A stretch of DNA of 63,287 nucleotides, the filler included, from Octopus bimaculoides (Eukaryota), in assembly GCF_001194135.2 (NCBI RefSeq). It is 5 parts of 5 records of this genome, joined end to end, with 100 filler letters (N's around TTAATTAATTAA, not from the genome) between each part and the next. Parts side by side here need not be neighbours in the genome. Positions count along the whole stretch, not along the records: positions 1 to 31,170 come from NC_068985.1; 4 more parts are not named here. One strand, written 5' to 3'. This document shows, one piece after another, positions 1,230 to 21,654 of the stretch (positions are counted from its first letter, which is position 1; the number at the start of each line of letters is the position of its first letter). The position numbers and the translations under genes are program-made. A model generated the notes under the pieces. That model had not been told where the DNA came from and ran no database searches. It saw nothing but the letters and a program-made list of their open reading frames with translations.

Positions 1230-1361
1230 ACTTTAGAAAGATCGATTAATTCAGAAAAATTGGTATTGCCTTCTGCTTCAAGAATTTGACCAAATCTTTC
1301 CACGATTACTTTTAACCGTTTGTCGAGGTCAAAGTGGAAAGGAAACGTTCGGATCCAGTAT
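1230..1361 (-). CDS. RASGRP: RasGRP-like exon YWIRTFPFHFDLDKRLKVIVERFGQILEAEGNTNFSELIDLSK(V); gene continues beyond window start
   Basis: 132 nt, phase 2-2, ttttttatttag acceptor and gtaagt donor. Aligns to the end of the RasGRP REM domain (YWITEF...F.MD..L...F.EL...EG...LID). Confidence 0.94.
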
Positions 1362-1717
1362 CTAAATAAAAAACAAAACAAAACATCAATGAAATGACAG
1401 GTAAGCATGAAATTAGATAATGGTTTCAAATTTTGGTACAAAGCCAGTAATTTTGTGGGGAGGGATAAATTAATTATATTGACCCCTGGGTACCATGCAG
1501 TGGGATGGAACTCAGAGCCACATGGTTGTGAAGTGAACTGTTTAACCACACAACCCTGCCCTATGTTTCATATTTACATCTAATCATATATTTGATACTC
1601 TAAAGAAGATGTTAAGAATCTTAGCAACAACAATTCACATCAGATATACAGATATTTAAAAGAAATTATTTGACCTTTTTCATACCATCTCACCTGAAAC
1701 TAACTCTGGATCTATAA

Positions 1718-1895
1718 CAGTGCTCCACAACCAGAATACCACAGCACACTGGTGTGTCACAAGACAATACTAGGTGTGCCGCAGAATATAACTTTTTGTC
1801 CCCATACATTTAGTTATAGTTTTAGTTCAGGTGTGCTACCAAATTTTGAAACGAATACAAGTGTGGCGCAAATGAAAAAAAGTTGCAGAGCACTG
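1718..1895. mobile_element. hAT-like MITE, 178 bp
   Basis: Termini CAGTGCTCCACAAC and GTTGCAGAGCACTG; 8-bp TSD atctataa/atctgtaa. Confidence 0.8.
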
Positions 1896-2109
1896 ATCTG
1901 TAATACAAACATTTTGTCTTAAAGGAATTCAAATTCAAATCTTCCATCAAAATTTTGCTTTAACTTATGTCCCAGACACCAGTTTAACAATGACAAAGTT
2001 ATTTTACTAAACTCTTAATTATTTTAAAATTTAATTGAAAAAGCAGCAATGTATTTTAGCAGAAATATGGTAACAAAAGGATTAAAATTTAGCAGAAATA
2101 TAATTTGAA

Positions 2110-2267
2110 ATTTTGTTGTGTCTGGAGAGAGTCATTCTCTTTTAGTGCCTTATCATTTAATACACTCACCGGTAAAGTTTCCTTTTAAATGAGTGGAAAT
2201 TTTACCGGTGAGTGTGTTAAATAATAAGGTACTAAAAGAGAATGACTCTCCCCAGACACAACAAAAT
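2110..2267. repeat. Fold-back inverted repeat (73-bp arms, 5 mismatches, 12-nt loop), probably a hairpin MITE
   Basis: Arm 2110-2182 is the reverse complement of 2195-2267. Confidence 0.92.
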
Positions 2268-2342
2268 ATGCTTCAACACACAAACTCACATAAAGATTCT
2301 TGAATTACCAAATCCAAAAACGAAATAATTTGAAATATTTAC

Positions 2343-2456
2343 CTGAAAACATGGCATATTTTTGCTTTGTAAACCTGTAGAGAACAATCTTGTTGCTGTG
2401 GGGTGTGTGAACATTTTACAGCTTCACATTGTATTGTATCTTCTACACCAAGATAT
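2343..2456 (-). CDS. RASGRP: RasGRP-like REM exon YLGVEDTIQCEAVKCSHTPQQQDCSLQVYKAKICHVF(R)
   Basis: 114 nt, phase 2-2, gtaaat donor. KICHVFR joined to YWI matches the RasGRP KICYFVRYWI motif. Confidence 0.93.
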
Positions 2457-2752
2457 CTAAAACACTTAAGTCAAGGAATGTTTACATGAAAAAAAGAGTT
2501 CCTGCAGGAGTTATTCTCTGCTTTCCTGGGACAATTAATAAGACTGATATTGTACATGGTCTTGTTTTAGTTAATGTTGATAAGAAAAAAATTTCAAAGG
2601 GCATTTTAAGGGGTTATCTTAACATATAGTATTTAAACTGACTACATTTGGCTCAAATATTCTACCTAATTTATGTTCAAACTGGCCAGATTCAACCTCT
2701 CTCATTCTAAAAATAAAAAATAACATCATCAAAATCTCAAAGCTACAAAATA

Positions 2753-3387
2753 CTGTAAAAACCCATGTAATTTACGCACTTTTTTCGCAAAAACAAAAAT
2801 AAACTTTAAGGGGTGCGTAAATTATGAGTAAATCCCAGGTCTTCCCAGGTAGACCCAGGTAGACTCAGGTAGACCCAAGAAGACCTGGGATGAGATGGTG
2901 AAGCATGACCTTAGAACGTTGGGCCTCACGGAGGCAATGACAAGCGGCCGAGACCTTTGGAGATATGCTGTGCTTGAGAAGACCTGGCAAGCCAAGTGAG
3001 ACTGTAACCATGGCCTTTGCCAGTGCAGCATAACCAGCCCATTTAAGAGTACCCTTCAATCATTGGGCAATATACTGTGGGCAAGAAATGTAAACTAAAG
3101 TTTATTATAAACAACACAAACACTTCATAATTAAATAGCTTTCAATGCGATACCTGTTAAACAGAAATTATTTTTATTTGGTGAAAATTAAATAAAATGT
3201 AATCATAAGTAAGTGAAATTATGCTAAATACAACTAAATTGAAAACCTTTTTTCCCTGACCTTATTGGTAATTCTGAAAACTTTTGGGTGCAAATTTTAC
3301 ATGAATAGAAGCTTTATTTAACAATTTTTATCCTGAAAATCACATGCATAAATTACACAGGTGCGCAAATTACATGGGTTTTACATG
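2753..3387. mobile_element. TA-flanked TIR element (pogo/Tigger-like MITE) nested in another repeat
   Basis: Left TA|CTGTAAAAACCCATGTAATTTACGCAC, right GTGCGCAAATTACATGGGTTTTACATG|TA. The uninterrupted host repeat is visible at ~3565-3615. Confidence 0.75.
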
Positions 3388-4065
3388 TATGATTAATTCA
3401 AAAACAATATGAATGTTACATTTCTCAGAGTAGTCTGAATGCTTAAGGAATATACCAGCCATATCCAGTTTAGATATTCTACTAGTTTCATGTTGATCCA
3501 GACCAGATCTGGTCTCTCATACCTACTCTACAATGTCACTCTAAAAATAAAAAAAATCACATAATCAAAATGTCAAAGCTACAAAATAATGTCTGATTAA
3601 TTCAAAACAATATGAATAAATAAACATTACATTTGACAGTCTGAGTCCTAAGGGGGTCAAAGAGGGAAAGAGATTAGGGAAATGATGGAGTAATTTGATG
3701 AGGCACAGTAAAACGAAACACCAAGAGGTGGAGAACTGGATATATGAGATAGGCGTTAACAGGTCTTCAGTGCAGCTGGTTAATTCAAAGAAATAGAAAC
3801 TGTAAAAGAAACAGATGAGAAATAGAAGGAAACTCCAATGCAAAAGAATGCTTAAAGTAGTAGATGTTATTCTTGTTGCTTATGCCAGTGTTTCTCAAAC
3901 TATCTGATGTGGGGTACCAGCAGTTTTTTTTTCTCCAATGTGCCAGGGACTGGTAATATTTCTTAGTAATATTAATTTATATCAGAAACAATATATATAT
4001 GATGAATATAATAAAAGTTAACAATTTTTTTTTATCTTATATTTATTTTGTAAACAAAAGGTATA

Positions 4066-4451
4066 GGAGTGGCTGTGGTAAGTAGCTTGCTTACCAACCA
4101 CATGGTTCTGGGTTCAGTCCCACTGTGTGGCACCTTGGGCAAGTGTCTATAACTATAGCCTTGGGCCGACCAAAGCCTTGTGAGTGGATTCGGTAGATGG
4201 AAACTGAAAGAAGCCCATCATATATATGTATATGTATGTATGTGTGTGTATATGTTTGTGTGTCTGTGTTTGTCCCCCAAACATCGCTTGACAACCGATG
4301 CTGGTGTGTTTACACTGCTGTAACTAGCAGTTCGGCAAAAGAGACTGATAGAATAAGTACTAAGCTTACAAAGAATAAGTCCTAGGGTCGATTTGCTCGA
4401 CTAAAGGTGGTGCCCCAGCATGGCCACAGTCAAATGATTGAAACAAGTAAA
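4066..4451 (+). mobile_element. tRNA-derived SINE, family A (ggagtggctgtg(t)ggtaagtagcttgc...), near full length
   Basis: tRNA-like head with GGTTCAGTCCC B-box-like motif. Copies recur at ~5330(-), 7705(-), 18670(-), 20520(-), 21115(+), 28800(+) and 42910(+). Confidence 0.85.
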
Positions 4452-5252
4452 AGAATATATATATATATATANNNNNNNNNNNNNNNNNNNNNNNNNNNNN
4501 NNNNNNNNNNNNNNNNNNNNNNNNNNNNNNNNNNNNNNNNNNNNNNNNNNNNNNNNNNNNNNNNNNNNNNNNNNNNNNNNNNNNNNNNNNNNNNNNNNNN
4601 NNNNNNNNNNNNNNNNNNNNNNNNNNNNNNNNNNNNNNNNNNNNNNNNNNNNNNNNNNNNNNNNNNNNNNNNNNNNNNNNNNNNNNNNNNNNNNNNNNNN
4701 NNNNNNNNNNNNNNNNNNNNNNNNNNNNNNNNNNNNNNNNNNNNNNNNNNNNNNNNNNNNNNNNNNNNNNNNNNNNNNNNNNNNNNNNNNNNNNNNNNNN
4801 NNNNNNNNNNNNNNNNNNNNNNNNNNNNNNNNNNNNNNNNNNNNNNNNNNNNNNNNNNNNNNNNNNNNNNNNNNNNNNNNNNNNNNNNNNNNNNNNNNNN
4901 NNNNNNNNNNNNNNNNNNNNNNNNNNNNNNNNNNNNNNNNNNNNNNNNNNNNNNNNNNNNNNNNNNNNNNNNNNNNNNNNNNNNNNNNNNNNNNNNNNNN
5001 NNNNNNNNNNNNNNNNNNNNNNNNNNNNNNNNNNNNNNNNNNNNNNNNNNNNNNNNNNNNNNNNNNNNNNNNNNNNNNNNNNNNNNNNNNNNNNNNNNNN
5101 NNNNNNNNNNNNNNNNNNNNNNNNNNNNNNNNNNNNNNNNNNNNNNNNNNNNNNNNNNNNNNNNNNNNNNNNNNNNNNNNNNNNNNNNNNNNNNNNNNNN
5201 NNNNNNNNNNNNNNNNNNNNNNNNNNNNNNNNNNNNNNNNNNNNNNNNNNNN

Positions 5253-5319
<67 letters not shown>

Positions 5320-5329
5320 TACACAACAG

Positions 5330-5480
5330 ACTTCTTTCAGTTTCCATCTACCAAATCCACTCACAAGGCTTTGGTCAGCCCAAGGCTATACTAGAAGACA
5401 CTTGCCCAAGGTGCACACAGCAGGACTGAACCCCAAACCATGAAGTCAAGATGCAAGCTTCTTACCACACAGCCATGCCT
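5330..5480 (-). mobile_element. SINE family A, 5' part
   Basis: Reverse complement of 4066-4220. Confidence 0.8.
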
Positions 5481-5630
5481 GTTTTTTTTTTTAAGAATGA
5501 CATTGTAGGATAGGTGTGAGAAGCTGGATCTAGCTGGTTTGAACTTAAAACAGCTGGAATATTTGGGCCTGATATGGCCCAAGTTTAAATGTTAATGCGT
5601 TAAAGTTTCTACAATGATTTTAAAGGATAC

Positions 5631-5736
5631 AATTCTACGAGATGTTCTGCCAGTTCCTGAGATGGTATAAACCATTTATGCATGAGAAGTAAAACGCGTG
5701 GATAGAACGAGTCATCAACCAAACTACCACTGGGAC
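5631..5736 (-). CDS. RASGRP: RasGRP-like REM exon (C)PSGSLVDDSFYPRVLLLMHKWFIPSQELAEHLVE(L)
   Basis: 106 nt, phase 1-2, ttcttttctttcag acceptor and gtatcc donor. LLMHKWFIPSQEL matches the REM motif (L-x-MH-x-W/I-F/V-x-x-S-x-EL). Not in the ORF track; read by hand. Confidence 0.93.
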
Positions 5737-5871
5737 CTGAAAGAAAAGAAAATATTTTATCAAATAAGTTGCAGTTAAATATGTTTCAGTTTCTTTTGAT
5801 CAGAATATATAGTATTTTAGAAATGAAGGAAGTCTCAAAAGCAGGAGAATTGCTGTGAAAACAGCTTAGAG

Positions 5872-6144
5872 CAGGGGTGGGGAAACCCCCACCCACGAGT
5901 GCAATTGCGCCCATGAGCCCATTTTATTGCACCCACAGGCTGGTATATTTGTATGTACAAAATACAGAAAATGTTTCAATTATGAAATTTGTGCAATATT
6001 CGTATGCCTATTTGCAACGTAGGTCACATTTCCATTATGACATAAAAGGGTCAGACTCGAACAGAAAATCGTCCAGTAATTGCCATTTGAATGGAAATTT
6101 TGTTATCACTATAAAACACATATTGCTAGGTTTGTACCACCCCT
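5872..6144. mobile_element. hAT-like MITE relic
   Basis: Starts CAGGGGTGGGGAAAC; degraded gtaccacccct at the right end, next to a SINE insertion. Confidence 0.45.
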
Positions 6145-6157
6145 TTGGGACCCAACT

Positions 6158-6500
6158 TAAAAAAAAAAAAAAAATAGGAGCACTCCGTCGCTTACAGCGT
6201 CGAGGGTCCCAGCTGATATGATCAACAGAACAGCTTGCTCGTGAAATTAACGTGCAAGTGGCTGAGCACTCCACAAACACGTGTACCCCTAATGTAGTTC
6301 TCAAGGAGATTCAGTGTGACACAGAGTATGACAAGGCTGGCCCTTTGAAATACAGGCACTACTCATTTTTGCCAGCTGAGTGGACTGGAGCAACGTGAAA
6401 TAAAGTGTCTTGCTCAAGGACACAACGCGTCACCGGGAGTTGAACTCACGATCTTACGATCGTGAGCCGAATGCCCTAACCACTAAGCCATGCACCTTCA
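6158..6500 (-). mobile_element. Full-length tRNA-derived SINE, family C, with 13-bp target-site duplication
   Basis: TSD ttgggacccaact (6145-6157) and ttgggaccgaact (6501-6513). The body gaaattaacgtgcaagtggctgagcactccac recurs at ~28400, 39720-39890 and 41330-41510. Confidence 0.85.
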
Positions 6501-6634
6501 TTGGGACCGAACTACACTCTAGCTGAAAAATAAAGACCTTTTAAGTGATATAAACGTCCTAAGTTCAGTGGCGATGTTAATGAAGATACTACGTGCTAAT
6601 TTAATGTGTTAAATCTTAATTAATGTATATCGAA

Positions 6635-6644
<10 letters not shown>

Positions 6645-6667
<23 letters not shown>

Positions 6668-6800
6668 GTTTAACGTCCGCTTTCCATGCTAGCATGGGTT
6701 GGACGGTTTGACTGAGGACTGGCGAACCAGATGGCTGCACCAGGCTCCAATCTCATCTGGCAGAGTTTCTACAGCTGGACGCCCTTCCTAACGCCAACCA
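6645..6800 (-). mobile_element. SINE/RTE-type 3' tail ending in (GAT)n, family E
   Basis: catcatc gtttaacgtccgctttccatgctagcatgggttggacg motif; related copies at ~12230-12515, 12825-13220, 15000, 25680-25800 and 26345-26470. Confidence 0.8.
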
Positions 6801-6872
6801 AAGCTTTGGTAGACAGAAACTGAAAGAAGCCTGATGCATGTGTGTGCGCATGTGTGTGTGTGTGTGTATGTA

Positions 6873-7515
6873 CCAGGTCTGATCTATAAGTATCCAGACT
6901 GTTGCCATAGTAACGAAGCTAAAGCATGCACAGCTTGGCCAAGGCTGACCTTGAACTCTGCTGTGCAGAGTTTTTAATGTTTTAGCTCACTTCTGCTGTT
7001 TACAGCAATGCTTGGAAGGAAGGTGTGTAGCGTGTGATTGTCACATTGACCATGACAGATGAAGTTGTCATGAGGATACCTGCTCAGAGGCCTATGAAGA
7101 GTCACAGAAAGTGTATGGAGAAGAGTGTATGAGCAGCACACAAGTGTACAAGTGGTTCAGACATTTCCAAGATGGCCGAAAAAATGTCGATATTGACAAA
7201 CATCCTGGGAGAAAAACATTGCAGATGTGCATGCAGCTGTGAGGGGAAATCATTGAATCACCATCCATGAGTTATCAGAGGATGTGCAGATTAGTTATAG
7301 TTCAGTTCAGTCCATTATCACTGATGATTTGGGTATGAGACACGTGTCTGCCAAGTTTGTGCCAAGACTGCTTTTAGCTGACTAAAGAGACACTCAGGTT
7401 TCAGTTGCACAAGATCTTGAGTGTGTCAAGAATGATAAAAAGTTTTTGAAAACTTTGTGTATGCCTCTGAGCAGGTATCACCAAGCTTTTGGCAAAATTT
7501 GAAGCAGATTCTCTG
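6873..7515 (+). mobile_element. Decayed mariner transposon, 5' part, cut off by a SINE
   Basis: TA|CCAGGTCTGATCTATAAGTATCCAGACTG TIR-like end. Translates to QKVYGEECMSSTQVYKWFRHFQDGRKNVDIDKHPGR (HTH) and GMRHVSAKFVPRLL (WVPHEL-type motif), with stops. Confidence 0.88.
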
Positions 7516-8341
7516 AAATAAAGTGTCTTGCTCAAGAACACAACACACAGCCCGGTCCGGGATTCGAACTCAAAACCTCACGATCGTAAGCTTAATGCTC
7601 TAACCACTGAGCCATGCGCCTTCACACACACACACACACACATATATATGTATGTATGTATGTATGCATGTATGTATGTATGTATATACTTATATATATA
7701 AATATATATATACGATGAGCTTCTTTCAATTTCTAACTACCAAATCCACTTATAAGGCTTTGGTTGGCCCAAGGTGCCACGCAGTGGGACTGAACCTGGA
7801 ACCATGTGGTTGGGAAGCAAACTTCTTACCACACAGCCAAGCTGGTGCCTATTTGTTGAGAAATCATTATCAAATAATAAAAATAACATTTAAAACAAAA
7901 AATCATGTTAATACCAAATTATATAAAAGTAATTAAGTCATATGGTAATTAACCAATGTAATGCTTTTTACACAATTTTTAAATACCTTAGCATTAACGA
8001 GGGAATAAACACATAAAAATTGAAAGAGAGCATTCATAAATTGCTATTTTTATGCATTTATTGTATAACAACTATTTTTGGAAAAGTACAAAGCCATTTA
8101 CGAACTACTTAGAACCGAAATGGAGCTAACAACACCAAGAATTATCAACATAACACAAACAATGTGGATGAAATTAGGTGTTAACACAACAAACCTCCAT
8201 GGAATTTTGTATCTTGTTACGAATGTTGTAGTGAATGTGGTCAATGGAAGAAAAAAAAAAATGGAAAATTTTAAGAAATAGAAATGTTGTTATTGTTAGG
8301 GGTGTAGTATGTATTACGCATCTGAATATATAATAGCAATC

Positions 8342-8841
8342 GTTGTTATCATCACCGTTATTGTCATCCCATTCATCATCATCACCATCATCATCATCAG
8401 CATCATCATCAGCATCATCATCGTCAGCAGCAGCAGCATCACTATCATACCATCACCATCATCACGTGCACCATAATTCTCATCTTGACAATCACCATCA
8501 TCATCATCATCATCATCACTATCACACCATCATCATGACCACCATCATCATCACCATCACAATCATTACCACCACCATCATCATCATTATTATCGCCGTC
8601 ATCATCGCCATCATCATCACCATCATCATTATCATCATCATCATTATCACACCATCACCATCATCGTCATGACCACAATCATCACCACCATCATCACCAC
8701 CATCATCATCTCCATGAGCACCATATTCCTCACCACCACCATCATCACAATCATCACCAACATCATCATTTTCACCACCATCAGCAGCAGCAGCAGCACA
8801 TCACCACCACCATCATCATCATCACATCACCATCGCATTAA

Positions 8842-8873
<32 letters not shown>

Positions 8874-8990
8874 ACATCATCATCAACATCATCATCATCA
8901 CCATCACCATATTATCATCATCATCATAATCATCATCATCCTCACCAGCATCACTGTCATCACATCACCATCATCACCATATTATATCCA
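8342..8990. repeat. ~650-bp mosaic CAT/CAC/CAG trinucleotide tract
   Basis: Direct reading; the poly-S/H/I ORFs in the track are by-products. Confidence 0.9.
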
Positions 8991-9039
8991 TGCTTATATG
9001 GGTTGGATGGGTTTAGCAGCACACTGCCGCTCATGGTCT

Positions 9040-9555
9040 TTAGTCATCCAACACAAATAACCTGAGATATAACCAACCAGCTTCATCCTTAAGTTGTTCC
9101 CTGCCCCCATCTTCTCCATCAAGAATAAGGACTCAGTACCACAACAGCTTGGGTTTCAAGGGTCCACAACTATCCAACATTCAAGGGTCCACAACTATTC
9201 AGCATTCATGGGTCCACAGCTATCCAACATCCAAGGGTCCACAGCTATCCAGCATTCATGGGTCCACAGTTATCCAACATCCAAGGGTCCACAGCTTTCC
9301 AACATTCAAGGGTCCACAACAATCCAACATTCTGTCAGAGATGTACAAGGTGTAGATGTGGAGGTCTTCAAAGTGCATCTGAACAAATTTCCGTCTGAGA
9401 TACCAGATGAACCCACATCATGACAGGCGGCACAAAGAAGAGCAGCTCTGTCCAACTCGCTACTTCACCGGAAATAATACAGAAAAGACACCCAATTATA
9501 CCAAAAGGCAATGCCCCAACATGGCCTCAGTCTCTGGCTGAAACCAATAAATCAA
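9040..9555 (+). mobile_element. CR1/L2-group LINE 3' fragment with an internal 25-bp x7 tandem expansion (9157-9331)
   Basis: QGPQ.SNI followed by RDVQGVDVEVFKVHLNKF...IPDEP, typical of the C-terminus of CR1/L2-type ORF2. Confidence 0.7.
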
Positions 9556-9599
9556 ATGGTGGCTTATGGCTGTGTAACTTTGTCATCACCAACCAATTC

Positions 9600-10085
9600 A
9601 CTACATGAACTTGGTTTATTTTATTATTGTCCTAGCACTACTTTTGTACTGCTGTACTTTGATATATGGAGTATTGAAGTACAGCTGATATGGAGTGAAG
9701 AACCCAAGCAGTTGAGTACAAGTGTTCCAGAAGGCTGCTACACGTCCCATATGCAGAGCTCTGTTAGGCAACAAATCAACAAATACACTGACAGAGAGGA
9801 ACCACTCCTTGTGCAGGTAAAAAGATGAAAGCTCGACTGCTGCAGATACATGTCTTGCTATAATGCCATGTTCAAAACGGGACACAGTTGAAGGCAGTGG
9901 GACAAAAGAGAGGCAGACAGAGAAAATCCTGGTTGGACAACATCAAAGAATGGACAGATCACAGTACTGCAACCTTTCTGTGCAAGACAGAGAACAGTGG
10001 TGACGGCTCAGTGCAAAAGCATCTAGAACGGTACCCCAATGACTTGCAGCATCAGTTAAGAGATTTTGAAGATGATGATGATGAC
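9600..10085 (+). mobile_element. RTE-clade LINE 3' fragment
   Basis: VRQQINKYTDREEPLLVQVKR and RGRQRKSWLDNIKEWT, ending in a (GAT)n tail. Confidence 0.82.
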
Positions 10086-10303
10086 TTAGATACATTAATA
10101 TTTTCATCTACAATAAACAGACTAGAAAATTAACCTTTCTCAGATCAATATTTAATGGATTGCTGTAAATTATGTTTATTAAACATTTTATTATGTGAAG
10201 GCACATTTAATGATTTAATGAGATAATAATTTTTCAGGCTATTAACCGCATGTATATGTTGTGTACATGTGTGTGTATGTATGTGTGTTTGCACACATGT
10301 GTT

Positions 10304-10334
<31 letters not shown>

Positions 10335-10893
10335 GCTTGTGTTTTATATTTATTTAATATTTCAATTGGTTTGATCTTCAATTACAATCAGAGATCAAAC
10401 CGATTAAAATATAGTGTAATTTGATGATGTAAATATTCACTGCACAAATAAGGTTAATAGTCCAGAAAATTATAATCTCATTAACAATAACTCACCAGAG
10501 AACTATATACAGACAACTAATGTTCATAAGATATCATAAAATGGTTAAAAACGTATTTAACAATGCCACAATATACTCCTTGTAATAGTTGGGTCATTCT
10601 TCAAAAGATGTCTATCTGTTGCATGACTATTATGAGTAAGATGAAGTTTTTATTAATAAACTGACCATATTGGTAGACCTAAGTGTGAAATCGAGAAATT
10701 TCAGCCATATAAAACTATGTGGAACTGTATGTAAAAGCATATATAAAACATGCAAAAACATATACAGACACACACACACATGTACACATACACATACTCA
10801 CACACACACACACACACTCATACACACACAGACACTCGATTTACAGGCATCCACACAATACACACAGAGACACGGACACAGACATTCACACTA

Positions 10894-10933
10894 ACTGTCC
10901 GATGAACGGGAACGTGAAACTCAGAGTAACAGT
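10894..10933 (+). ncRNA. Minimal type I hammerhead-ribozyme-like motif (U4C variant), Penelope pLTR-type
   Basis: ACTGT-CCGATGA-ACG(GGAA)CGT-GAAA-CTCAGAG-TA-ACAGT: stems I and II pair, stem III is quasi-palindromic, and the GUA cleavage triplet is present. Confidence 0.55.
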
Positions 10934-11743
10934 CTTTTGTTATATTTCTGCTGCTCATACCAGCCATGACGAAGGGAAATAGCCCTGAAACTCGAGTCAC
11001 CTTTATATATTTATATATTTATATATTTGATCCTTTATATTGAACACTCAATATTTCATCTACATTCAATACTTTCTTCCATGGTGCCATCCATTTTTAT
11101 TTTATTTTATTTTATATTATATATTGTATATTATATTATATATTGTATATTCCATATTCTATACCCCACATTGGTTCTGCAGGAATATAAATAAAACATA
11201 AAAAACAGACAGTGTTGGAACTCTTTTAAACTAAATAATATATATANNNNNNNNNNNNNNNNNNNNNNNNNNNNNNNNNNNNNNNNNNNNNNNNNNNNNN
11301 NNNNNNNNNNNNNNNNNNNNNNNNNNNNNNNNNNNNNNNNNNNNNNNNNNNNNNNNNNNNNNNNNNNNNNNNNNNNNNNNNNNNNNNNNNNNNNNNNNNN
11401 NNNNNNNNNNNNNNNNNNNNNNNNNNNNNNNNNNNNNNNNNNNNNNNNNNNNNNNNNNNNNNNNNNNNNNNNNNNNNNNNNNNNNNNNNNNNNNNNNNNN
11501 NNNNNNNNNNATATATATATATATATATATATATATGGATGTGTGAAGGAACAAAAGAAAGAGGTACTCAATACATTTAGTAGGAGTTACTACATATCAT
11601 TTTCTAGAACAGTTTGATTCAGCCCCGTGTGACTTAAAGTTTCCATAAGAAGCCTACAAAAACCTTAAGTTGCATGGCAACAACATTGATGATAACAATG
11701 ATGATGATGATGATGATGAAGATGATATGTTTGGTATACTTAC

Positions 11744-12124
11744 AGAAACTCTCAACACAGATTTGAATCAGTTTCTCCAAAGTGGCAGCACGGACACTAA
11801 TCCCTGGTAAGAGAGGTTTCTCCTCTTCCAAGTAATCCGAAGTAGGAATACTCGGGACAGTTTGTTCTACAGATGATGAAGATGAGGATTCAGAAGGATT
11901 TACTGGTGCCAGGCTTGTCGTCGCTGTTGTTTCAGCTCCTGTTGTGACTGTTGTGCTGGCTGGTATCGATTCTGTTGTTGGAACCATGTTATGGAGTGGG
12001 GGAGAAGGCGGAGGTGGAACTCTGGTCGGAGTAGAGTTGCAGCTTAATGAAGTGAGTTGAGGGGAACATGATGTGTTGAAGGAATGCTCACCCAACCCGA
12101 GTGGCTCATGGCGGCAAGTTACCT
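11744..12124 (-). CDS. RASGRP: RasGRP-like exon: S/T/P-rich N-terminal extension and start of the REM domain (...PGISVRAATLEKLIQICVESF)
   Basis: 381 nt, phase 1-1, ttacag acceptor and gtaagt donor, open frame. VRAATLEKLIQICVESF resembles the RasGRP REM start (human RASGRP1 GASLDDLIDSCIQSF, recalled). Confidence 0.92.
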
Positions 12125-12466
12125 CTGTAATAAATTAAAAGATAATTAAAGACAAATTAATTGTTGCTTTGAATATATACTTTTGTTAATTACATCACAG
12201 GAATTTAGAAGCTTCAAAAGACAGGAAATGATTTAAGGACAGTGCCACACAAAAATAACTGATGCTGGTACCACGTAAAAAGCACTGGTACTGGTACCAC
12301 GTAAAAAGCACCCAGTATACTCTGTAAAGCGTTTAGATATTAGGAAGGGCCTCCAGCCATAGAAACCAAGCCAAAACAGATTATGAAACCTGGTGCAACC
12401 CCTGGCCTTGCCAGCTTCTGCCAAAACATCCAACCCATGCCAGCATGGAAAACAGATGTTAAATGT

Positions 12467-18639: not shown

Positions 18640-18672
<33 letters not shown>

Positions 18673-21654
18673 CAACAGGCTTCTTTCAGTTTCTGTCTAC
18701 CAAATCCACTCCCAAGGCTTTGGTTGGCCCAAGCCTATAGTAGAAGACACTTGCCCAAGATACCATGCAGTGGGACTGAACCCGGAACCATGTGGTTGGT
18801 AAGAAAGCTACTTACCACGCAGTCACTCCATCTGTCACATAATGTCAAGACAAGGAGACACAAACACCCACAAAACCCTGAACAAATGCCCACGTATCCA
18901 CAAACCCCTGAACACACACATACATACAACTGGTGTCTTTCACTTCCCATCTCTCAAATCCATTGAAAATGGCTCTGACCAACCATGCACCATAGCAGAA
19001 GACTCTTGCCCAAGGTACCATGCAGTGGAACTGAACCTGAAACTACAAGGTTCAGAAGTATACTTTTAACCACTCAATTATACCTGAGCCTCCATGTGTG
19101 CATATGTATGTGTATGTGTGTGTGTGTGTAACTAAAGAATATCTCCTTTTTTTTAAACACATTATTATATTACAAACATGTCTATTTGAAGTTCAAATCT
19201 AGTGTTTTTTATTAACAATTTTCCATATTTCCTTATTTCTCTTTAATGTTTAGATTGTAACAATAACATTACAAAATCCATTAGTCTGATGTTTAGAGAC
19301 TTTAAGAAAACTCATTTTCAAAATGTTGTTAATGGAGTGTTGTCCATTCGTTCTGCTGTTAAGACACAAACGGTCTTGGGAATATTGTTTATAACTAATA
19401 AAATCCACACCAGATTTGCAATCATATAACAGTAACTCCTGATAGATTTCATGATATCACAGTCATACTTTTATGTGAGATGTTTCAGAGAGTCTAATTC
19501 AGGTTTGTATTTTTGCCATTAGCAAAGCTTCCTTGGTTATTATCAACATTTTTTTTTTTTGCGGAATCTTATATATATTTGAATGATGGCTGATTTATTC
19601 TAAAGTAAATATGCTAATCACTGTTGTGATTCATTGTATGAGAACTTCTCTTTTATGATGAATATCTGCTCATAACACATTCGGTTCATTAAGGCAGCAA
19701 GCTGGCAGAATCGTTAGCATGCTGGGTGAAACGCATAGTGGTATTTCGTCTGTCTTTACGTTCCAAGTTCAAATTCCGTCGAGGTCGACTTTGCCTTTTA
19801 TCCTTTTCGGAGTCGATAAATTAAGTACCAGTTGCATACTGGTTCAATCTAATCGACTAGACCCCACCCCTAAAATTTTAAACCTCGTGCCCAGAGATAT
19901 TCAGCAACAGTACTTTTCTAAACCCACATGGTTGCAATAATTTTGATATATTCTAAGATTTTGTAGTTAGGGGTAGAATAAATAGTCTTTTATTTCATCT
20001 GTTGTTTTCATGATATATTCATCCATTTTCTAACCAGCAACCAGAACATTGATCACTGAGAGAAATATGAGATCTAATTTATTGGAGACTTGCAATTCAT
20101 GAAAGACTTGTGTATTTTCAGTGCTGTTTCTTCAACCACTGCTGTTGTTGCTAAGAGAAGCAAATTATCCCACTTTGTCGTACCTATTCACTGATAGGTG
20201 AACCAGGCTGTTGAAAGTTATCTGTTGCCCATGGCCACTGTATAGACAATGCTATGAATAGAAATTCAAACATCCAACCATTTAGCCTTTTGAAAATTAC
20301 CAAATAAATTCAGTTATTTATGTTTTTAAATTGCATTCAACCTAATCGGTTATTTATATACATGTTGATGCTGTTCTGTATTTAGGTAAAAAGGTAATTC
20401 TTTCCCAAATAAATTGCACTTCATATTCGAGGCTCTGATGAAGCATCAGTTGTCAAGTGATGGTGGGGGGGGNNNNNNNNNNGGGGGGGGGGGATAAACA
20501 CACACACACACATATAAATATATAGTGGGCTTCTTCCAGTTTCCTTCTACAAAATCCACACACAAGGCTTTGGTCAGCCCATAGCTATAGTAGAAGACAC
20601 TTGCCCAAGGTGTCACGCAGTGGGACTGAACCCGGAACCATGTGGTTGGGAAGCAAGTTTCTAACCACACAGCTACGCCTATGCCTATGTTTTTTTTTGT
20701 TTTTTTCACAGATATTTTCTCAGTACTTCTTGTTTGACTGCAATATATCTTTTTTTAACGACCTTCGATGTTTAACTATTTTTTTTCTCTAACATTTCAC
20801 TTTTTGCAAATGTTTTTTTTTTTTATTGGCTCTGAATTTTTGGCTCTTTTCATCAACTGGTTTATACTGTAATTTTTATTCTTGTATATTTTCCCTTTTT
20901 AGCTAAAACTTAATCCTGTGACTTTGAATAATTTCACCATATATTTCTCTAACAATCTAATGTCACAATTAAACATGAAAAATAGCTTTTTAAAAATGAC
21001 CATTATCGTTTCAAATAAGGATTATTTGAATACTATGGAAATTCCTCAGACGAAAAAAATAAATAAGAATAAATAAATAAAACATGCTTTGGGGCACATA
21101 TTCCTACAGGTGCAGGCATGGCTGTGGGGTTAAGAAGTTTGCTTTGTAGTCATGTGGTTTTGGGTTCAGTTCCACAGTGTGGCACCTGGGTAAGTGTCTC
21201 AGACCAACGAATATCTTGGGAGTGAATTCGGTAGTCAGAAATTGTGTAGAAGCTTGTTGTGTGCCTGTGGGTTTATTCAACTAATTGACTGGCCCCTCTC
21301 CAAAAATTTTGGGCTTTTTGCCTAGAGTAGAAAAGAATTGTTAGCCCGCTGGGTGAAAGGCTTAGCGGTATTTTGTCTGCTGCTAGGTTTTGAGTTCAAA
21401 TTCTGCCGAGGTCGACTTTGCTTTACATCCTTTCAGAGTTGATAAAATAAGTACCAGTTGAGTACTGAGGTCGATGTAATCAACTAGTCAGAACGTAAAG
21501 ACAGACAAAACACCGTTAAATATTTCACCCAGTGTACTAACGATTCTGCCAACTCGCCAACCTTAAGGGTGATGTTAATAATGATGGCAATGACAGCAGT
21601 GATGATGATGATGAGGAGGAGGAGGAGGAGGAGGAGGAGGGCGGCGGCGGCGGC

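What the first reader, a model, noticed from the sequence alone, without database searches (positions are those of the whole stretch)
2457..5630. Minor-spliceosome (U12-type) intron in a cephalopod RasGRP gene
Seen: the intron between the 106-nt and 114-nt REM exons begins GTATCCTTT and has TTCCTTGAC with its branch A 14 nt before the AG, without a pyrimidine tract. The neighbouring introns have ordinary gtaagt/gtaaat donors. Established: RTATCCTT plus TTCCTTRAY 10-20 nt from the acceptor define U12 introns, which are rare and can be rate-limiting for expression. Recalled and unverified: vertebrate RASGRP genes are listed among minor-intron genes. Inference: this is an ancestral bilaterian U12 intron retained in an octopus, so RasGRP output would depend on U11/U12/U4atac/U6atac.
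Basis: partly seen in the sequence, partly recalled or inferred. Interest (0 to 1): 0.8.

Follow-up and report, generated by a model that had tools for sequence, protein, structure and literature searches.

The report
Conserved U12 intron in RasGRP gene
The intron between two exons of this mollusc-like RasGRP gene has the sequence signals of a rare minor-spliceosome (U12-type) intron, and the same intron sits at the same codon in sea anemone, bivalve, sea slug, scorpion, sea cucumber, turtle and vole, so it is a real but expected old feature.

Summary
On the minus strand, a 106-nt exon (5736-5631) and a 114-nt exon (2456-2343) join in frame. Together with two neighbouring exons they encode a RasGEF_N (REM) domain whose closest solved relatives are RasGRP2, RasGRP4 and RasGRP1.

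The intron between them (5630-2457) starts GTATCCTTT. It carries TTCCTTGAC with the branch A 14 nt from the 3' junction. Each motif occurs only once in the window, exactly at these boundaries. The donor scores about -1.9 bits on an approximate U2 matrix, against 4.6 to 8.1 for the neighbouring donors.

The assembly gap (4472-5252) lies wholly inside the intron, so no reading frame crosses it. The spliced peptide aligns without gaps over 141 residues to mollusc orthologues.

The same codon position, in phase 2, holds a U12-type intron in seven other genes from seven other species. It is GT-AG in Elysia, Pinctada and the anemone Actinostola. It is AT-AC in Centruroides, Apostichopus, turtle RasGRP2 and vole RasGRP3. 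Priapulus and Dimorphilus have lost it.

Novelty is low. RASGRP genes are known minor-intron genes, and 83% of human minor introns are reported as conserved in octopus. No RNA evidence was available, and the species could not be verified.

The parts
11744..12124 (-). Exon E1. It encodes an S/T/P-rich N-terminal region and the start of the REM domain (...LLPGISVRAATLEKLIQICVESF). The 3' end is firm, with a GTAAGT donor at 11743. The 5' end and the start codon are unresolved.
   Evidence: The position of its phase-1 junction is shared with orthologues.
5737..11743 (-). Intron 1. An ordinary U2-type GT-AG intron in phase 1, with a strong pyrimidine tract at the acceptor. It contains the assembly gap 11247-11510.
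5631..5736 (-). Exon E2, 106 nt, REM domain (CPSGSLVDDSFYPRVLLLMHKWFIPSQELAEHLVE-L).
5622..5630 (-). U12-type 5' splice site GTATCCTTT. It is preceded by the exon end ..GAATT, with no G at position -1.
   Evidence: It is the only GTATCCTT in the window. The approximate U2 score is -1.9 bits.
2457..5630 (-). U12-type intron of the GT-AG subtype, in phase 2. Its nominal length is 3174 nt, of which 781 are N. If the intron is retained, the reading frame stops after 8 further codons (ELYPLKSL*).
4472..5252 (.). Assembly gap inside the intron. Both flanks are (TA)n, and two copies of a SINE-like element in opposite orientation lie on either side.
2470..2478 (-). U12-type branch-site motif TTCCTTGAC. 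The branch A is at 2471, 14 nt from the last intron base.
   Evidence: It is the only TTCCTTRAY in the window.
2457..2458 (-). The 3' splice-site AG.
2343..2456 (-). Exon E3, 114 nt, REM domain (YLGVEDTIQCEAVKCSHTPQQQDCSLQVYKAKICHVF-R).
1362..2342 (-). Intron 3. U2-type GT-AG with a GTAAAT donor, in phase 2. The position is conserved in orthologues.
1230..1361 (-). Exon E4, 132 nt, the end of the REM domain (YWIRTFPFHFDLDKRLKVIVERFGQILEAEGNTNFSELIDLSK), followed by a GTAAGT donor at 1229. The rest of the gene lies beyond the window edge.

Best explanation
The intron at 5630-2457 (minus strand) is a GT-AG U12-type intron, one removed by the minor spliceosome. It lies in the REM-domain region of a RasGRP orthologue ('RasGRP3-like') from a mollusc-like animal.

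The mechanism below is inferred from the established model of minor splicing:
- The U11/U12 di-snRNP recognises GTATCCTTT and TTCCTTGAC together. U12 snRNA pairs with the branch site and bulges out A2471.
- The G at the R position can pair with U of U12 as a wobble pair.
- U4atac/U6atac.U5 then catalyses removal, using the AG 14 nt downstream of the branch A.

Because the donor is a very poor U1 site, correct RasGRP mRNA should need the minor spliceosome. Retaining the intron gives a stop after 8 codons, inside the REM domain.

The intron is an ancient one. It sits at the same codon and in the same phase in cnidarian, mollusc, chelicerate, echinoderm and vertebrate RasGRP genes. The terminal dinucleotides differ between lineages (GT-AG or AT-AC), and some lineages have lost the intron cleanly.
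For: **Shown directly**
- Motifs and coordinates.
- Each motif is unique in the window and sits at the boundaries.
- The exons splice in frame to a RasGEF_N domain (Pfam 1.9e-10, 41.3 bits against a cutoff of 28.3).
- The best solved relatives are RasGRP2, RasGRP4 and RasGRP1 (4.4e-18 to 5.7e-10).
- The peptide is 53-56% identical, ungapped over 141 residues, to bivalve and gastropod RasGRP3-like proteins.
- On the approximate U2 donor matrix the site scores -1.9 bits against 4.6-8.1 for the neighbours, and no better GT lies nearby.

**Orthologous U12 introns in the same alignment column, phase 2**

| Species | Donor | Branch site |
|---|---|---|
| Elysia marginata | GTATCCTTTT | CCTTGAC |
| Pinctada imbricata | GTATCCTTC | CCTTAAC |
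| Actinostola sp. | GTATCCTTTT | TCCTTGAC |
| Centruroides vittatus | ATATCCTTT | TTCCTTAAT |
| Apostichopus japonicus | ATATCCTTT | CCTTAAC |
| Mauremys reevesii RasGRP2 | ATATCCTTG | CCTTAAC |
| Microtus ochrogaster RasGRP3 | ATATCTTTT | TTCTTTAAC |

**Literature**
- All human RASGRP genes carry minor introns (PMC6865273).
- Retention of the U12 intron 4 of mouse Rasgrp3 accompanies loss of spliced mRNA (PMC5224493).
Against: - No RNA evidence for the junction was available.
- The donor and the acceptor lie on different contigs of a scaffold, separated by a gap of estimated length.
- The acceptor region is not devoid of pyrimidines (13 of 20), so U2AF binding cannot be excluded from sequence alone.
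- No minor snRNA gene lies in the window. That says nothing about the rest of the genome.
- The U2 matrix I used is an approximation recalled from published tables. It is not intronIC.
- I could not confirm that the organism is a cephalopod. No cephalopod RasGRP appeared in the protein searches.
Confidence: 0.93

Rival explanations
1. It is an ordinary U2-type GT-AG intron whose ends resemble the U12 consensus by chance.
For: The termini are GT-AG. The acceptor region is moderately pyrimidine-rich, and a T7 run lies upstream of the branch motif. One chance copy of each motif is expected somewhere in the window.
Against: - The single copies of both motifs sit exactly at the two ends of one intron.
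- The donor matches U1 only at GTA (-1.9 bits).
- The same position holds AT-AC introns with ATATCCTT donors in four other species. Those cannot be standard U2 introns.
Confidence: 0.03
2. The scaffold join across the gap is wrong or incomplete. The donor and the acceptor would then belong to different introns, with an unseen exon or other sequence in between.
For: The gap at 4472-5252 separates the donor from the acceptor. The gap length is only estimated. Inverted SINE-like copies and microsatellites flank it, which is a known trouble spot for assembly.
Against: - E1 to E4 are colinear and in the same orientation across three contigs.
- E2 and E3 join in frame and align ungapped over 141 residues to four mollusc orthologues.
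- No orthologue has an exon between these two.
- Both gap flanks are (TA)n.
Confidence: 0.03
3. The locus is a non-functional or unexpressed gene copy, so the splice signals are relics.
For: Only the N-terminal exons are in the window. The start codon is unresolved, and an out-of-frame Kozak-like ATG lies in E1. No matching annotated protein was found in the databases.
Against: - All four exons are open and in frame.
- The splice sites are intact and the REM residues are conserved.
- The U12 motifs are perfect, whereas decay would be expected without selection.
Confidence: 0.03

Closest known systems
U12-type intron of vertebrate RASGRP genes (mouse Rasgrp3 'intron 4'; RasGRP2 and RasGRP3 AT-AC; RASGRP4 AT-AA)
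   Same: - The same gene family.
- The same codon position, just before the conserved Tyr of ..ELAxKLLxxY.., in the same phase 2.
- The same flanking phase-1 and phase-2 U2 introns.
- A U12 donor and branch-site consensus.
- Retention gives an early stop.

Sources; PMC5224493; PMC6865273; PMC1557818.
   Different: - The terminal dinucleotides are GT-AG here, but AT-AC or AT-AA in the vertebrates examined.
- The branch site here has G at the R position.
- The intron is of similar length (about 3.2 kb nominal against 2.2-2.9 kb).
U12-type GT-AG intron of mollusc RasGRP3-like genes (Pinctada imbricata, Elysia marginata)
   Same: The same position, phase and GT-AG subtype, with a GTATCCTT donor. 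The proteins are the closest relatives found, at 47-56% identity in the REM region.
   Different: The intron here is several times longer (331 and 712 nt in those species) and is loaded with SINE-like repeats. Its branch site is a better match to the consensus (9 of 9 against 7 of 9).
U12-type introns in general (Burge, Padgett and Sharp 1998; Levine and Durbin 2001; intronIC, Moyer et al. 2020; from my own knowledge)
   Same: RTATCCTT at the 5' end. TTCCTTRAY 10-20 nt from the 3' end. A non-zero phase. Deep conservation. Switching between subtypes, and clean loss in some lineages.
   Different: Nothing departs from the class.

Membership tests
U12-type (minor-spliceosome) intron | The 5' splice site matches RTATCCTT from intron position +1. 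| tested here: met
   GTATCCTTT at 5630-5622, matching 8 of 8 consensus positions plus T at +9.
U12-type (minor-spliceosome) intron | The branch site matches TTCCTTRAY. | tested here: met
   TTCCTTGAC at 2478-2470, 9 of 9. It is the only copy in the window.
U12-type (minor-spliceosome) intron | The branch A lies about 10-20 nt from the 3' splice site. | tested here: met
   14 nt from A2471 to the last intron base 2457. The only nearer AG (2467-2466) is 4-5 nt from the A, which is too close to be used.
U12-type (minor-spliceosome) intron | No strong polypyrimidine tract before the acceptor. | tested here: inconclusive
   13 of 20 pyrimidines at -23..-4, against 15-16 of 20 in the neighbours. 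Much of this is the branch motif itself, and a T7 run lies upstream.
U12-type (minor-spliceosome) intron | Poor fit to the U2-type (U1-binding) donor consensus. | tested here: met
   An approximate U2 matrix gives -1.9 bits, against 4.6, 8.1 and 5.9 for the three neighbouring donors. No alternative frame-keeping GT scores above 2 bits nearby. The matrix is recalled and approximate.
U12-type (minor-spliceosome) intron | The orthologous position is occupied by U12-type introns in other species. | tested here: met
   Seven other genes, in seven other species, have one in the same alignment column and phase 2. Four are AT-AC and three are GT-AG.
U12-type (minor-spliceosome) intron | The junction is used in RNA and depends on U11, U12, U4atac and U6atac. 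| not testable with these tools
   No transcript data were available. No snRNA gene lies in the window. The literature reports minor introns in Octopus sinensis.
RasGRP (Ras guanyl-releasing protein) | An N-terminal REM (RasGEF_N) domain most similar to RasGRP proteins. | tested here: met
   - Pfam RasGEF_N at 1.9e-10.
- The best PDB matches are RasGRP2, RasGRP4 and RasGRP1.
- The best library hits are RasGRP3-like proteins.
RasGRP (Ras guanyl-releasing protein) | A CDC25 (RasGEF) catalytic domain, an EF-hand pair and a C1 domain downstream. | not testable with these tools
   These exons would lie beyond the low-coordinate edge of the window. The orthologues that were fetched have them.

The most novel reading that the evidence does not exclude
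This one RasGRP intron has kept its position, phase and U12 identity since before the split between cnidarians and bilaterians. Its termini have switched between GT-AG (anemone and three molluscs, counting this window) and AT-AC (scorpion, sea cucumber, vertebrates) at least twice, and it was deleted cleanly in Priapulus and Dimorphilus. In this long-intron genome it may act as a splicing bottleneck for a neuronal or immune Ras activator. It also breaks automatic gene models, for example in Elysia marginata and Mactra antiquata.
Probability: 0.5. Interest if true: 0.3.

Novelty: new member of a known kind. Interest (0 to 1): 0.17.

Why it matters
The main value is for annotation.

- It fixes the exon structure of the N-terminal RasGRP exons in this scaffold.
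- It shows that the gap does not disturb the gene.
- It flags a junction that gene predictors tend to miss. The Elysia marginata model skips the upstream exon, and several database fragments end at exactly this junction.

In biological terms, it predicts that RasGRP expression in this animal needs the minor spliceosome, as it does in mammals. It also adds a well-resolved case of U12 intron conservation back to the cnidarian-bilaterian ancestor, with subtype switching. None of this changes current understanding. RASGRP genes are known minor-intron genes, and most human minor introns are already reported as conserved in octopus.

Tried and rejected
- **Word-indexed protein searches.** Searches with the 72-residue and the 198-residue window peptides found nothing. 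The exhaustive HMMER search was needed instead.
- **Search for a cephalopod orthologue.** The third word-indexed search, with the Elysia protein, listed 120 RasGRP proteins and no cephalopod. I therefore could not check another cephalopod or confirm the species.
- **Failed locus look-ups.** Three look-ups failed because the isoform was not on record: Hipposideros RasGRP4, Mizuhopecten and Lingula. RasGRP1 and RasGRP4 were not examined at the DNA level.
- **Rfam.** It found no RNA family in the window, and so no minor snRNA.
- **Supplement of PMC10639083.** The supplement held as text has no per-gene table.
- **Hidden exon in the gap.** Considered and rejected on the ungapped alignments.
- **A cryptic U2 donor near E2.** Considered and rejected, because no frame-compatible GT scores above 2 bits.

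Full report
**Observation**

The gene runs on the minus strand. Reading the sequence and translating it confirms a 106-nt exon (E2, 5736-5631) and a 114-nt exon (E3, 2456-2343).

The intron between them begins GTATCCTTT (5630-5622) and ends ...cattccttgacttaagtgttttag (AG at 2458-2457). TTCCTTGAC lies at 2478-2470. Its branch A (2471) is 14 nt from the last intron base.

Two further exons complete the picture. E1 ends at 11744 and is followed by GTAAGT. E4 is 1361-1230 and is also followed by GTAAGT. The E3 donor is GTAAAT.

**Chance**

GTATCCTT and TTCCTTRAY each occur exactly once on the two strands of the window. About one copy of each is expected somewhere by chance. The point is where they sit: one exactly at the exon end and the other 14 nt before the acceptor of the same intron, on the coding strand. 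From the expected densities I estimate the joint probability of that placement at 1e-8 to 1e-9.

**The gap**

The N run 4472-5252 lies inside the intron, 378 nt from the donor and 2015 nt from the acceptor. No reading frame crosses it.
- Both flanks are (TA)n. Two copies of a SINE-like element in opposite orientation lie on either side. This explains why assembly failed there.
- The four exons are in the right order and orientation across three contigs.
- E2 and E3 join in frame (GAA TT|A TAT, phase 2).
- The joined 141-residue peptide aligns without any gap to Mytilus, Mizuhopecten, Pinctada and Haliotis proteins at 53-56% identity.

I conclude that the join is sound and that no exon is hidden in the gap. 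Only the intron length (nominally 3174 nt) is uncertain.

**Gene identity**

- The spliced E1-E4 peptide matches Pfam RasGEF_N (E = 1.9e-10, 41.3 bits against a cutoff of 28.3).
- Among solved structures it is closest to RasGRP2, RasGRP4 and RasGRP1.
- An exhaustive HMMER search gave 110 hits. The best ones are annotated as RasGRP3-like in echinoderm, priapulid, chelicerate, rotifer and insect genomes.
- The closest of all are mollusc proteins.
- The catalytic, EF-hand and C1 exons lie outside the window.
- No cephalopod protein was retrieved in any search. The organism is therefore shown only to be mollusc-like. The abundant SINE-like repeat looks to me like the common octopus element, but that is recollection and not a test.

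**U12 or U2**

- On an approximate U2 donor matrix (recalled from published tables) the E2 donor att|GTATCC scores -1.9 bits. The neighbouring donors score 4.6, 8.1 and 5.9.
- No frame-compatible alternative GT scores above 2 bits in E2 or in the next 130 nt.
- The acceptor region has 13 of 20 pyrimidines, against 15-16 of 20 in the neighbours.

**Comparative evidence**

This is the decisive part. I fetched nine genomic loci of RasGRP genes, eight of them orthologues from other animals and one the vertebrate RasGRP2 paralogue, and located their exon junctions by exact spliced alignment. In a protein alignment, the octopus-like intron falls in the codon just before the conserved Tyr/Phe of ..ELAxxLxxLY.., in phase 2. 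summarises the intron at that position:

| Species | Lineage | Termini | Donor | Branch site | Length (nt) |
|---|---|---|---|---|---|
| Elysia marginata | gastropod | GT-AG | GTATCCTTTT | gaCCTTGAC | 331 |
| Pinctada imbricata | bivalve | GT-AG | GTATCCTTC | aaCCTTAAC | 712 |
| Actinostola sp. | sea anemone | GT-AG | GTATCCTTTT | aTCCTTGAC | 488 |
| Centruroides vittatus | scorpion | AT-AC | ATATCCTTT | TTCCTTAAT | 1778 |
| Apostichopus japonicus | sea cucumber | AT-AC | ATATCCTTT | caCCTTAAC | 792 |
| Mauremys reevesii RasGRP2 | turtle | AT-AC | ATATCCTTG | caCCTTAAC | 2864 |
| Microtus ochrogaster RasGRP3 | vole | AT-AC | ATATCTTTT | TTCTTTAAC | 2171 |

Two species lack the intron.
- Priapulus caudatus has E2 and E3 fused but keeps both flanking introns.
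- Dimorphilus gyrociliatus has lost all the REM-domain introns.

The flanking phase-1 and phase-2 U2-type introns are shared across most species.

The intron is thus at least as old as the cnidarian-bilaterian ancestor. Its subtype differs between lineages, which requires at least two GT-AG/AT-AC switches. It has also been lost cleanly at least twice.

**Literature**

- All human RASGRP genes are minor-intron genes (PMC6865273).
- Mouse Rasgrp3 has a U12-dependent intron 4. Its retention, in a model of reduced snRNP assembly, accompanies loss of spliced mRNA (PMC5224493).
- RASGRP4 has a conserved AT-AA U12 intron (PMC1557818).
- Octopus sinensis is among the species with many conserved minor introns (PMC10639083).

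**Mechanism**

This part is inferred from the established model of minor splicing.
- The U11/U12 di-snRNP binds the donor and the branch site cooperatively.
- U12 pairs with TTCCTTGAC and bulges out A2471.
- U4atac/U6atac.U5 replaces U11 and catalyses splicing to the AG 14 nt downstream.

The donor cannot serve as a good U1 site. Retention gives ELYPLKSL-stop. A functional mRNA should therefore depend on the minor spliceosome. I did not test whether this limits the rate of expression.

**Verdict**

It is nonetheless the expected state for this gene family in a lineage known to keep most ancestral minor introns. I file it as a new member of a known kind, of low interest. Its practical value is for annotation, because gene models break at this intron: Elysia marginata GFR65011.1 skips the upstream exon, and many database fragments end at the junction.

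Noticed in passing
L001 about 10793-12160 (Elysia marginata BMAT01011015.1): The annotated protein GFR65011.1 is named 'Ras GTPase-activating protein-binding protein 2' but is in fact a RasGRP. Its gene model skips the exon upstream of the U12 intron by joining a cryptic GT inside exon 1 to the U12 acceptor. Mactra antiquata KAL4237259.1 (98 aa) and many short library hits stop at query residue 60, which is the U12 junction. Predictors seem to fail at this intron.
   Followed up: partly
Loci L001, L003, L004, L005, L007, L008, L009 and window 2457-5630: The subtype splits at one orthologous U12 intron. It is GT-AG in the window, two other molluscs and a sea anemone. It is AT-AC in a scorpion, a sea cucumber and two vertebrate paralogues. 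This implies at least two subtype switches. Priapulus (L002) and Dimorphilus (L006) have lost the intron cleanly.
   Followed up: partly
Window 4074-4213, 5331-5475, 7720-7839, 18668-18792, 20530-20680, 21113-21199, 25791-25902, 28809-28950: A SINE-like element of about 150 nt, followed by a microsatellite, occurs at least eight times at 80-87% identity. Several assembly gaps (4472-5252, 20473-20482, 28987-29895) begin in or beside the microsatellite next to a copy.
   Followed up: partly
Window 11986-12125, minus strand: The 5' end of the coding sequence is unresolved. A Kozak-like gccgccATGa at 12109 is out of frame with the REM reading frame and stops after 21 codons, so it may be an upstream ORF or an assembly indel. 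An in-frame ATG lies at 11986. An acceptor-like ttacag at 12125 would allow a further upstream exon.
   Followed up: no
Window 30769-31170 (+) and 7111-7242 (+): Two transposon remnants. One is a reverse-transcriptase fragment cut by the window edge (RVT_1, E = 7.7e-5, below the Pfam cutoff). The other is a Mos1/mariner HTH_48 remnant inside intron 1 (E = 2.1e-4, below the cutoff).
   Followed up: partly
L007 26895-32763 (Centruroides vittatus): In the scorpion, the intron after the E3-equivalent exon is GC-AG (cag|GCAAGT). The other species examined have GT-AG at that conserved phase-2 position.
   Followed up: no
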